A stretch of 64,000 nt of DNA from Camelus ferus. Its lineage: Eukaryota. The DNA lies in the NCBI RefSeq assembly GCF_009834535.1, contig NC_045716.1, positions 19,592,001-19,656,000 of the forward strand. Direction: 5' to 3'. Below are positions 45,865 to 47,706 of this stretch, piece by piece. The position numbers and the translations under genes are program-made. The notes below the pieces were generated by a model. It had not been told where the DNA came from and did not search any database. It saw nothing but the letters and a program-made list of their open reading frames with translations. The stretch's first letter is position 1; each line of letters begins with the position of its first letter.

Positions 45865-46044
45865 TTATCTTATATCTATAACCGTGTTTTTCCTTTCTAA
45901 GTTTTCATCTAAAAACCTTGCTTTTATTTTTTATGAAGTCATATTGAGAAAATTTGAGAGCCATTGTTTCCCTAAATCGCTGAGTCACCCACCATCTGTG
46001 AAAAGTTAGCAGCTGCCTCAGCTGGTTCTGTCTTCTGAAGATAA
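45865..46044 (+). promoter_or_regulatory. SPTA1: Erythroid promoter of SPTA1 (NF-E2/MARE site, CACCC box, E-boxes, GATA sites)
   Basis: cGCTGAGTCAc at 45978-45988 overlaps CACCC. CAGCTG at 46010-15 and 46019-24, AGATAA at 46039-44, TTATCT at 45865-70. The human alpha-spectrin promoter is known to depend on GATA1 and NF-E2. Confidence 0.75.
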
Positions 46045-46045
46045 C
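46000..46045 (+). other. SPTA1: SPTA1 non-coding exon 1' (start approximate)
   Basis: Perfect donor AAC|GTAAGT at 46045/46046 downstream of the NF-E2 site. Intron 46046-46210 contains opposed GATA sites (ctatct 46144-49, ggataa 46160-65) and ends in tttcaccag. This matches the exon 1'/intron 1' layout described for human SPTA1. Confidence 0.6.
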
Positions 46046-46210
46046 GTAAGTTGTAGCTGGCGGGATTCTGGCCCAAGTAAGATGCTATTTTTTTTTTTTT
46101 TTTTTTTTTTGTCTTTGCCACAAATGTAACCCTTCTTTCATCTCTATCTGAATTAGACTGGATAATTCCATGTGAGTTGTCTCTCTTTCGGATACATTTT
46201 GTTTCACCAG

Positions 46211-46254
46211 ATTCCTCACTTCTGGGAAACGTGGAACCATTTCCAAAGGAAGCT
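46211..46254 (+). other. SPTA1: SPTA1 exon 1; ancestral coding part 46231-46254 begins with GTG rather than ATG
   Basis: GTG GAA CCA TTT CCA AAG GAA GCT|gtgagt = VEPFPKEA versus human MEQFPKET. Phase-0 donor and CAG acceptor at 46208-46210. Confidence 0.85.
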
Positions 46255-47469
46255 GTGAGTACAGAATTCTTTACAGTACAGTTGATCACCAATATAATTA
46301 GGCAGGCTGTCTCCTCTGAACTTTCTGTACTATCTTTGACCGAATCAGCAAGAACTGTTCTTGGTTTTTAAGAAGGAGAGATGTTTAATTTTAACTGTCT
46401 TTTTTATCAATGTCTCACTTTAATCGGCAGCCTTGAGGTTGTGGCTGTGCGGCACCAAAATCCAGCAAACACTGACTTATTTGGGTTCGCCTGGAGACCA
46501 GTTGGGTAACGTGGAGCAAAATAACACACACTGAAGATTTAATTCTGTAGCCACAGAATGATTTAATTCTATAGCTGAACCAGTACAGACCATCCACAGA
46601 GTAGCAATTATATACAGGAGAAGAAGACTAAAATTTGAACTGTATATTAAATGTTTTGGATGAGATAAGGTAGGAAAAACTGCGCTTATATCCAGATGAG
46701 TGAAGGTGGACCCAGTGGAAATTTTGCTGGATGTTGTCACAAATAGGTTGGATTCCACTGTATGAAAATAATATTTTGTGTTGTTAGAGAGTATAATGTT
46801 TTACATTGCAAAAGCCGATTACTGAGATGCTAATAATTCGATATTTGTGATAATTGGGTAGCAGATGTGCTGAACTTTTGATTTGTAATGTTTATGAATA
46901 AAGCAAATAAAAGAGTAAACAATATGTTATATTTTTAAGTTAGAAGGAAATCTTTTCAAACTTCTCGGTGTATCATTCATCTAATTAATTGAAAGTGATT
47001 TTTATTTATTCATTAAGTGAAATTCGCCATGCTCGGCACATGTTAATGCCTTTTGGGCCTTTGAAAGCAACACAATTATACATCTTCTTTATCTGTCTGA
47101 AACTCTGTGATTTTATAAATTTCAACTTGTTTTCCATTATTAGTCCAAATTAATTCTGTTTACGGAAATTAATACATGTTGGCACAAATTTATGTGAAAA
47201 GTTGGAAATGTATTTTGAATGACCAAGAATTATTAGCCTAAGCTGTAGCTGCATACGGTTAAATTTTTAGCATATGTGCTGCCGAAGTGAGCACTGTATA
47301 TGGTTAAAATTATATAAATATATTATAGCCTTTCTAACAACAGGCTTTTATAAGCTTAAAGATATGTGAACATAAGTCCAACATGAGTAAGTGCCTTGGG
47401 ACGTGTAAAAGGACAGTGTGCTAGAGATTTGAGAACCTGCATAGATAGAAGCCTTTTAACTTGCAGGCT

Positions 47470-47706
47470 ATGGACAGTGATTGGCCAAAGGTGCTGGAAA
47501 CAGCAGAAGAGATCCAAGAGAGGCGTCAGGAGGTGTTGACTCGGTACCAGAGGTTCAAGGAACAGGTTGCTGAGAGGTCTCAGAAGCTTAAAGACCAGTT
47601 TTACTACAACGTTTTCAGACGGGATGCAGATGACCTGGAGAAATGGATCTTGGAGAAACTCAAGATTGTAGGCGATAAAAGCTATGAAGATTCAGCTAAC
47701 AAACAG
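47470..47706 (+). CDS. SPTA1: Spectrin alpha chain, erythrocytic 1, exon 2 (exon starts 47467; first ATG at 47470)
   Basis: [26 protein letters not shown]...[11 protein letters not shown] covers the alpha0 helix and the start of repeat 1. 240-nt exon, cag acceptor, GT donor. Confidence 0.95.

What the first reader, a model, noticed from the sequence alone, without database searches (positions are those of the whole stretch)
46211..47472. SPTA1 ancestral start codon is GTG; translation must start at a strong ATG in exon 2 or at a near-cognate GUG
Seen: exon 1 reads aaacGTGgaaccatttccaaaggaagct|gt (VEPFPKEA versus human MEQFPKET). There is no ATG in predicted exon 1' or exon 1, and no in-frame ATG back to the TAA at 46078-80. 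The first ATG is codon 2 of exon 2 (gctATGg, G at -3 and +4), giving [19 protein letters not shown]. This start position matches non-erythroid alphaII-spectrin (MDPSGVKVLETAEDIQERR, recalled). The GTG itself has an optimal context (A at -3, G at +4). Inference: the protein is about 9 residues shorter just before the tetramerisation helix, or two N-terminal isoforms arise by leaky GUG initiation. A new Trp (G14W) also sits here.
Basis: partly seen in the sequence, partly recalled or inferred. Interest (0 to 1): 0.75.

Follow-up and report, generated by a model that had tools for sequence, protein, structure and literature searches.

The report
Camel spectrin start codon is ordinary
Camelid red-cell alpha-spectrin does lack the human-type start codon in exon 1 and must start at the ATG in exon 2, but the other even-toed ungulates sampled, carnivores, bats and marsupials do the same, so only a nearby glycine-to-tryptophan change is specific to camelids.

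Summary
The sequence is as described. Exon 1 (46211-46254) has GTG at 46231-33 where lemur has ATG. It holds no ATG. Exon 2 (47467-47706) opens cag|GCT ATG G. Two other camelid assemblies, one 3.5% diverged, carry the same GTG, ATG and TGG, so this is not a consensus error. The raw-read check failed.

Of 109 mammalian SPTA1 protein clusters, 58 are annotated from the exon-2 Met. These include deer, buffalo, whales, hippo, carnivores, bats, shrews, pangolin and marsupials. Exon-1 DNA reads GCA-TAA in buffalo, GCG-TAA in porpoise and GCG-TGA in hippo, an in-frame stop in each. Flying fox has an 8-nt deletion and bear has GTG. Pig, mink and a perissodactyl-like transcript also have a non-ATG codon there.

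A cattle paper equates bovine E91K with human E100K, a 9-residue offset. AlphaII-spectrin and hagfish spectrin start at the same Met. Exon 1 is therefore an old non-coding leader, and the exon-2 AUG is the normal start.

The evidence gives no support for GUG initiation but cannot exclude a trace.

G14W is real and camelid-unique (Gly in 105 of 109). It sits among other camelid-unique changes (G46S, E50K, S52Q, Y53F, Q56N). That cluster is the only lead left.

The parts
45979..45987 (+). GCTGAGTCA, a match to the NF-E2/AP-1-type consensus in the putative SPTA1 erythroid promoter
   Evidence: Read. The motif is invariant in all 9 aligned species. Its function is only recalled from work on the human promoter and was not tested here.
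46039..46044 (+). AGATAA, a match to the GATA consensus in the putative promoter or 5' leader
   Evidence: Read. AGATA(A/G) is conserved in all 9 aligned species. Its function was not tested.
46211..46254 (+). SPTA1 exon 1, a non-coding 5' leader exon in camelids with no ATG
   Evidence: CAG acceptor and GTGAGT donor are conserved in 9 species. The exon is 44 nt long, as in buffalo, porpoise, hippo, bear and lemur.
46231..46233 (+). GTG codon homologous to the ATG start of primates
   Evidence: it aligns to the lemur ATG. The same GTG is present in two other camelid assemblies and in black bear. Flying fox has GTA. Buffalo, porpoise and hippo have GCA or GCG.
46255..47466 (+). Intron 1 (GT...AG)
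   Evidence: Splice sites are conserved. The exon 1-exon 2 junction is seen spliced in transcripts of two other laurasiatherians.
47467..47706 (+). SPTA1 exon 2, the first coding exon: unstructured tail, helix C' of the tetramerisation site and the start of repeat alpha1
   Evidence: One search gives the translation; 115 bits to residues 9-87 of pig SPTA1 (8IAH) and 111 bits to human 1OWA and 3LBX.
47470..47472 (+). Functional start codon ATG, with G at -3 and G at +4
   Evidence: cag|GCTATGG is identical in 3 camelids, buffalo, porpoise, hippo, bear, flying fox and rhino. The window's own protein P0241 (2411 aa) and the seven other camelid models of about 2,400 aa start here. Two longer fused models read through it.
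47482..47484 (+). TGG, Trp at human position 14 (residue 5 of the camelid protein), a camelid-specific replacement of a near-invariant Gly
   Evidence: Trp is present in all 10 full-length camelid models and in 3 assemblies; among 109 clusters the residue is Gly in 105, Arg in 3 and Trp in 1.

Best explanation
This is the 5' end of camelid erythroid alpha-spectrin (SPTA1). Exon 1 is an untranslated leader exon. Translation starts at the AUG that is codon 2 of exon 2 and gives [14 protein letters not shown]... This is not a camelid novelty. The exon-2 Met is the start shared with alphaII-spectrin, hagfish spectrin, monotremes and marsupials. It is the only available AUG in every laurasiatherian lineage sampled at DNA or transcript level. 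The human-type MEQFPKET extension comes from an exon-1 ATG that is seen only in Euarchontoglires, Xenarthra and part of Afrotheria. In Laurasiatheria that codon has G at its first base (GTG in camelids and carnivores, GTA in a bat, GCN in pig, ruminants, whales, hippo and a perissodactyl-like transcript). Camelids therefore simply keep an old GTG. Shown here: sequence, homology, splice-site conservation, in-frame stops in relatives, and transcripts of two other laurasiatherians. Inferred: that camelid ribosomes use the exon-2 AUG, since no camelid RNA or protein data could be obtained.
For:: 58 of 109 mammalian SPTA1 clusters start at the exon-2 Met. These are all cetartiodactyl RefSeq-type models, Carnivora, bats, Eulipotyphla, rhino, pangolin, marsupials, elephant and some hystricognaths. 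32 clusters have the exon-1 Met extension. Read-through models show a non-Met residue at position 1: pig AEHFPKETAMDSGG, polar bear and mink VKHFPKETAMES, guinea pig V and chinchilla I. One search gives exon 1 in frame: buffalo GKA*RFPKET, porpoise GKA*HFPKET, hippo GKA*HFPKET, flying fox with an 8-nt deletion and a stop, bear KVKHFPKET and camelids NVEPFPKEA; cag|GCTATGG is identical in 9 laurasiatherians; full-length RNA contigs show exon 1 without an ATG spliced onto GCT ATG. One is 92% identical to the donkey model and the other 90% identical to the Sorex model. (PMC13229389): bovine E91K is equated with human E100K, so bovine numbering starts 9 residues later; the eight camelid models of about 2,400 aa start MDSDWPK.
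Against: There is no camelid transcript, ribosome-profiling or N-terminal peptide evidence, because read laying failed and no camelid RNA fragments were found. In camelids the frame from GTG into exon 2 is open and the GTG has a good context (A at -3, G at +4). A minor extended form therefore cannot be excluded. The position of the transcription start and the boundary of exon 1' are unknown.
Confidence: 0.9

Rival explanations
1. Leaky initiation at the in-frame GUG (46231) gives a second proteoform in camelids, extended by 9 residues (M/V-EPFPKEAA-MDSDW...), alongside the AUG-initiated one.
For:: the GUG has A at -3 and G at +4, is in frame, and has no stop before the exon-2 AUG; exon 1 is 44/44 identical between two camelid lineages. 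Near-cognate initiation is an established phenomenon (general knowledge).
Against:: the homologous extension is closed by TAA or TGA in buffalo, porpoise and hippo and disrupted by an 8-nt deletion in flying fox, and the codon is GCN in pig and a perissodactyl-like transcript. Neither the GUG nor the extension is under selection in Laurasiatheria. The 44/44 identity is not significant at 96.45% background identity (0.9645^44 is about 0.2). The TTTCCAAAGGAAAC block is equally conserved in species where it lies behind a stop, so its conservation is not coding. Near-cognate GUG is usually a few percent of AUG at best (general knowledge).
Confidence: 0.08
2. The GTG is an assembly or consensus error, and the real camelid base at 46231 is A.
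For: No raw reads could be laid.
Against:: the same GTG is present in three camelid assemblies, one of them 3.5% diverged. G at this base is found in all 8 laurasiatherian genomes aligned, plus the pig, bear and mink models and a perissodactyl-like transcript; the stretch is held at 0.96-0.99 of sampled words by 15 DNA runs of two camelid species. This shows the stretch is present, not the identity of that one base.
Confidence: 0.01
3. Camelid erythroid transcripts use another upstream or intronic first exon that supplies an in-frame ATG. Some pig models suggest this (MNAGNWSQ-AMDSGG, the sequence deposited with 8IAH).
For:: pig models P0191 and P0194 and the Nannospalax model P0248 carry alternative N-termini joined to AMDS/AMES. 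No camelid RNA was examined.
Against:: P0194 and P0248 end in ...FNLQ-AM, which is simply the 3' end of intron 1 (ttttaacttgcag) read through. These are annotation fills, not exons; the eight camelid models of about 2,400 aa start at MDSDW. The two longer camelid models (2,723 and 2,510 aa) are fusions with the neighbouring olfactory-receptor gene; real transcripts of two laurasiatherians show exon 1 joined to exon 2.
Confidence: 0.03

Closest known systems
Bovine and other cetartiodactyl SPTA1 (buffalo P0153, red deer/wapiti P0001, porpoise P0154, hippo P0180; bovine cDNAs of PMC13229389)
   Same: Exon 1 has the same 44-nt length and the same splice sites, and holds no ATG. The acceptor and start, cag|GCTATGG, are identical. 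The protein is about 2,411 aa and is numbered from the exon-2 Met, as shown by bovine E91 equalling human E100.
   Different: Ruminants, whales and hippo have GCA or GCG followed by an in-frame stop in exon 1. Camelids keep GTG-GAA with an open frame. Camelids have Trp where these species have Gly at human position 14.
Human SPTA1 (PDB 1OWA, 3LBX)
   Same: It is the same gene, exon 2 is homologous, and helix C' of the tetramerisation site is the same (111 bits).
   Different: Human starts at an exon-1 ATG (MEQFPKET...) and has Val instead of Met at the exon-2 position. Its N-terminal tail is 9 residues longer.
Pig SPTA1 in the red-cell membrane-skeleton cryo-EM entry 8IAH
   Same: It reads [15 protein letters not shown] at residues 9-23. 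The exon-2 Met is present and Gln is at human position 41, as in camelids.
   Different: The deposited pig sequence carries a different 8-residue N-terminus (MNAGNWSQ) taken from a gene model. The pig read-through model shows Ala (AEHFPKETA) at the position of the human Met1.
Non-erythroid alphaII-spectrin SPTAN1 (PDB 3F31; hagfish P0152)
   Same: Its start Met is at the position of the camelid exon-2 Met, followed by Gly and then KVLETA(E/D)(E/D)IQERR.
   Different: It is a paralogue with higher-affinity tetramerisation. It has Gly, not Trp, at the position of camelid W5.

Membership tests
Erythroid alpha-spectrin (SPTA1) orthologue | N-terminal partial repeat (helix C', [15 protein letters not shown]...RFK) followed by spectrin repeat alpha1 | tested here: met
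   the exon-2 translation hits pig SPTA1 (8IAH, E 1.8e-72 over the whole chain; 115 bits for residues 9-87). It hits human 1OWA and 3LBX at 111 bits, better than alphaII 3F31 at 84 bits.
Erythroid alpha-spectrin (SPTA1) orthologue | Full-length architecture of about 2,400 aa with spectrin repeats, an SH3 domain and C-terminal EF-hands | tested here: met
   the window's own protein P0241 is 2,411 aa with precomputed Pfam hits PF00435, PF00018/PF14604, PF13499 and PF08726. Only the first exons lie inside this window.
Erythroid alpha-spectrin (SPTA1) orthologue | Conserved position and phase of the exon 1 and exon 2 splice sites | tested here: met
   the CAG acceptor, GTGAGT donor, 44-nt exon 1 and cag|GCT acceptor of exon 2 are shared with 8 other mammals.
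Laurasiatherian-type SPTA1 start (exon 1 non-coding, start at exon-2 Met) | No ATG at the primate start position in exon 1 | tested here: met
   GTG in 3 camelid assemblies and in bear, GTA in flying fox, and GCA or GCG in buffalo, porpoise and hippo.
Laurasiatherian-type SPTA1 start (exon 1 non-coding, start at exon-2 Met) | ATG as codon 2 of exon 2 in the context G at -3 and G at +4 | tested here: met
   GCTATGG is present in all 9 laurasiatherian genomes.
Laurasiatherian-type SPTA1 start (exon 1 non-coding, start at exon-2 Met) | mRNA joins exon 1 to exon 2 and the protein N-terminus is the exon-2 Met | not testable with these tools
   For camelids, read laying failed and no camelid RNA-derived fragment was found. 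The spliced form was seen only in transcripts of two other laurasiatherians. There are no protein data.
Near-cognate (GUG) initiated N-terminal extension | Conservation of the near-cognate codon and of an open extension frame among relatives | tested here: not met
   the codon varies (GTG, GTA, GCA, GCG). Three lineages have an in-frame stop and one has a frameshifting deletion.

The most novel reading that the evidence does not exclude
The camelid-specific Gly14-to-Trp change is functional. It sits in the short unstructured tail that precedes helix C'. It acts together with the other camelid-unique changes at near-invariant sites of the alpha0-alpha1 linker (G46S, E50K, S52Q, Y53F, Q56N). Together these shift spectrin dimer-tetramer self-association and contribute to the rigid elliptical camelid red cell, alongside the known 4.1R isoform. 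The tail is not inert: a human construct of residues 19-163 does not bind beta16-17, whereas residues 2-163 do (PMC9082959, data not shown there).
Probability: 0.15. Interest if true: 0.55.

Novelty: already known. Interest (0 to 1): 0.15.

Why it matters
The start-codon part matters little. It is the normal state of most mammals and is already built into the public gene models for camelids, ruminants, whales and carnivores, and into the residue numbering of bovine spectrin papers.

Two useful by-products remain. First, human residue numbers for elliptocytosis mutations must be shifted by 9 when applied to camelid, bovine, canine or other laurasiatherian SPTA1. Gene models that pad the N-terminus, such as the pig MNAGNWSQ or ...FNLQ models, should be treated with caution. 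Second, the camelid tetramerisation region carries more lineage-unique changes at conserved sites than any other mammal sampled (5, against at most 3). This is a testable lead for red-cell shape, but it belongs to another finding on this window.

Tried and rejected
A second try beside that stretch was stopped by the cap. There is therefore no read-level base check and no camelid splice evidence.
- Camelid RNA-derived protein fragments: a search with the 80-aa exon-2 translation found nothing above 81% identity, so no camelid transcript contig could be fetched.
- Rhino exon 1 lies in a 1,560-N gap, which I left alone.
- A literature search for the alpha-spectrin promoter and exon 1' found nothing in the held library. 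The promoter motifs and exon 1' therefore rest on recall only.
- Exon 1 conservation between camelid lineages (44/44) was considered as evidence of coding. I rejected it, because it is expected about 20% of the time at 96.45% background identity.
- I considered that the exon-2 Met was new in camelids. I rejected this, because Met is at this position in 83 of 109 clusters.

Full report
**What is in the sequence.**
The stretch 46211-47472 is the 5' end of erythroid alpha-spectrin (SPTA1).
- Exon 1 runs from 46211 to 46254. It is preceded by AG at 46209-10 and followed by gtgagt.
- Exon 1 reads ...gggaaacGTGgaaccatttccaaaggaagct, with GTG at 46231-33. It contains no ATG.
- Read back in frame on unspliced DNA, the next stop is TAA at 46078-80, with no ATG between.
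- Exon 2 runs from 47467 to 47706. It opens gct ATG gac agt gat tgg and encodes [33 protein letters not shown]....
- The exon-2 translation hits pig SPTA1 (PDB 8IAH), human SPTA1 (1OWA, 3LBX) and, more weakly, alphaII-spectrin (3F31).

**Is the GTG real?**

As a substitute I fetched the locus from two other camelid assemblies through their annotated proteins.
- GCA_009834535.1 is identical to the window over 431 nt.
- GCA_048564905.1 differs by 15 substitutions in 422 nt.
- Both have the identical 44-nt exon 1 with GTG and the identical exon-2 start with ATG and TGG.

G at the first base of this codon is also present in every other laurasiatherian aligned. A consensus error is very unlikely.

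**Is it special to camelids?**
It is not. I used a full-length SPTA1 found by the representative search to collect about 110 mammalian SPTA1 clusters, and then read their N-termini.

58 of 109 clusters start exactly at the exon-2 Met, as M(E/D)(S/T)[11 protein letters not shown]. They include:
- wapiti and Yarkand deer, water buffalo, vaquita, beluga and hippopotamus;
- most pig models;
- bears, cats, dogs, seals, hyena and meerkat;
- many bats, plus mole, hedgehog and shrew;
- white rhino and pangolin;
- three marsupials;
- elephant, golden mole and some hystricognath rodents.

Echidna (MMQTSGVK) carries one extra Met ahead of that position.

32 clusters carry the human-type ME(Q/H/N)xxKET extension. 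All of them are Euarchontoglires, Xenarthra or Afrotheria.

Models that read exon 1 through without a start codon show what stands at the position of human Met1:
- pig: AEHFPKETAMDSGG;
- polar bear and mink: VKHFPKETAMES;
- guinea pig: V;
- chinchilla: I.

The window's own protein (P0241, 2,411 aa) and the seven other camelid models of about 2,400 aa start MDSDWPK.

**DNA and transcript evidence.**
I fetched the genomic locus for buffalo, vaquita, hippo, black bear, flying fox, rhino and ring-tailed lemur and aligned the exon-1 region. The acceptor CAG, the 44-nt length and the donor GTGAGT are conserved. Read in the phase of the donor, exon 1 gives:

| Species | Codon at the Met1 position and what follows | In-frame reading |
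|---|---|---|
| Lemur | ATG-GAG-CAC-TTT-CCA-AAG-GAA-ACT | MEHFPKET |
| Camelids (3 assemblies) | GTG-GAA-CCA | VEPFPKEA, open |
| Black bear | GTG-AAA-CAC | open |
| Flying fox | GTA, then an 8-nt deletion | stop |
| Buffalo | GCA-TAA | stop |
| Vaquita | GCG-TAA | stop |
| Hippo | GCG-TGA | stop |

In ruminants, whales and hippo the extension therefore cannot be translated at all. Rhino exon 1 lies in an assembly gap.

The exon-2 acceptor and start, cag|GCTATGG, are identical in all nine laurasiatherian genomes.

Two full-length RNA contigs show a leader without a usable ATG spliced directly onto GCT ATG.
- One encodes a protein 92% identical to the donkey model. Its leader reads GCA GAA CAC TTT CCA AAG GAA ACT | GCT ATG.
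- The other encodes a protein 90% identical to the Sorex model.

A cattle paper equates bovine E91K with human E100K (PMC13229389). Published bovine numbering therefore already starts nine residues after the human start.

**Polarity.**
The exon-2 Met is also the start of alphaII-spectrin and of hagfish spectrin. 3F31 aligns from its residue 3 to query residue 2, and hagfish P0152 starts MDSVGVKILETADD. It is also the annotated start in marsupials, and echidna has only one extra Met ahead of it. It is therefore the ancestral alpha-spectrin start.

The exon-1 ATG occurs in Euarchontoglires, Xenarthra and several afrotherians. By parsimony it was present early in placentals and was lost (A to G) before the laurasiatherian orders sampled here diverged. 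This is an inference. On the usual tree GTG is the older laurasiatherian state, being kept by camelids, carnivores and, as GTA, a bat. GCN arose later in pigs plus cetruminants, and separately in perissodactyls. Camelids thus retain an old GTG rather than having acquired one.

**How it works.**
The best reading is that exon 1 is an untranslated leader. Scanning ribosomes meet no AUG in exon 1 or in the sequence from 45989 to 46075, which could be exon 1'. They initiate at the AUG at 47470, which has G at -3 and G at +4. The product begins Met-Asp.

Shown here: the anatomy, the homology, the stops in relatives and the spliced transcripts in other orders. Inferred: the use of this AUG in camelids, since I have no camelid RNA or protein data.

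**GUG initiation.**
The frame from GTG to the AUG is open in camelids and the context is good, so a trace of extended protein cannot be excluded. Nothing supports it, however.
- The codon and the frame are not conserved in relatives.
- The block TTTCCAAAGGAAAC is equally conserved where it lies behind a stop, so its conservation is not due to coding.
- The 44/44 identity between camelid lineages is expected about one time in five at 96.45% background identity.

**What is camelid-specific.**
The Trp is. At human position 14 the 109 clusters have Gly 105 times, Arg 3 times and Trp once, in camelids. All ten full-length camelid models and three assemblies have TGG, where relatives have GGG, GGA or GGC.

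In the same exon, camelids are the only cluster with S46, K50, Q52, F53 and N56. The majority residue at those sites is held by 103-108 of 109 clusters.

After collapsing near-identical sequences, camelids have 5 lineage-unique residues at sites at least 90% conserved within positions 10-100. This is the highest count among 52 representatives, and the next highest is 3. E50K falls just under that cut-off, so it is not among the five.

Q41, listed in a neighbouring note as an elliptocytosis position, is not unique. Position 41 is Leu in 65 clusters, Arg in 30 and Gln in 13, including pig.

Relevant literature:
- A published analysis found the base of Camelidae among the branches with most adaptive change in SPTA1 (PMC5634635).
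- The elliptical camelid red cell has been attributed to a 4.1R isoform (PMC9926112).
- A human alpha0-alpha1 construct starting at residue 19 did not bind beta16-17, whereas residues 2-163 did (PMC9082959, data not shown there). The tail that holds W14 may therefore matter.

**Verdict.**
The inferred start at the exon-2 ATG is right. The arrangement is the ordinary state of the other artiodactyls sampled and of most mammals, and it is already encoded in public annotation. The only residue of interest is G14W together with the neighbouring camelid-unique substitutions, which another note on this window already covers.

Noticed in passing
window 47578-47610 (exon 2, human residues 46-56): Camelids alone among 109 mammalian SPTA1 clusters have S46, K50, Q52, F53 and N56, at sites where the majority residue is held by 103-108 of 109 clusters. 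Counting only sites at least 90% conserved in residues 10-100, camelids have 5 lineage-unique residues (W14, S46, Q52, F53, N56), the most of 52 representatives; the next highest count is 3. Q41 is not unique: 13 clusters have it, including pig, and Leu is the commonest residue.
   Followed up: partly
window 45979-45987 and 46039-46044: GCTGAGTCA (NF-E2/AP-1-type) and AGATAA (GATA-type) consensus matches lie about 230 and 170 nt upstream of exon 1. Both are conserved in all 9 aligned mammals. This looks like the erythroid core promoter recalled from work on human SPTA1.
   Followed up: no
A second candidate donor (cccaa|GTAAGA, starting at 46076) is kept in both camelids and is GC- or GT-type in most other species. 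The exon 1' boundary is therefore uncertain without RNA.
   Followed up: no
window 46170-46175; L010 40-45: A minimal upstream ORF, ATG-TGA, lies in the sequence just upstream of exon 1. In the perissodactyl-like transcript L010 the homologous stretch is part of the mRNA leader, where the exon-1 acceptor CAG reads CAC. The leader structure therefore differs between orders.
   Followed up: no
proteins P0155-P0252: There is reciprocal turnover of the two start codons. Among the 32 clusters with the exon-1 Met, the exon-2 Met is kept in only 9 and is replaced by V, L, I, A or P in 23. Among species without an exon-1 ATG it is always Met. Some phyllostomid and emballonurid bats start MAM(D/E)SS, with a new ATG one codon upstream.
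   Followed up: partly
proteins P0268, P0271 (camelid models); loci L001 and L002 about 62.7 kb: Two camelid gene models (2,723 and 2,510 aa, one named Camelus ferus EPY85721.1) fuse an upstream olfactory-receptor ORF onto SPTA1 exon 2 (...GQASLFLAMDSDW). This is an annotation artefact. 7tm_4 olfactory-receptor genes flank SPTA1.
   Followed up: no
whole protein P0241 against other orders: Camelid SPTA1 is only about 77-79% identical to its nearest non-camelid relatives. A perissodactyl-like and a shrew-like SPTA1 are 83-85% identical to other orders. This fits the reported burst of change at the base of Camelidae.
   Followed up: no
window 46086-46110: The poly-T run in the putative intron 1' is 7 nt shorter in the diverged camelid assembly and varies in length across species.
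   Followed up: no
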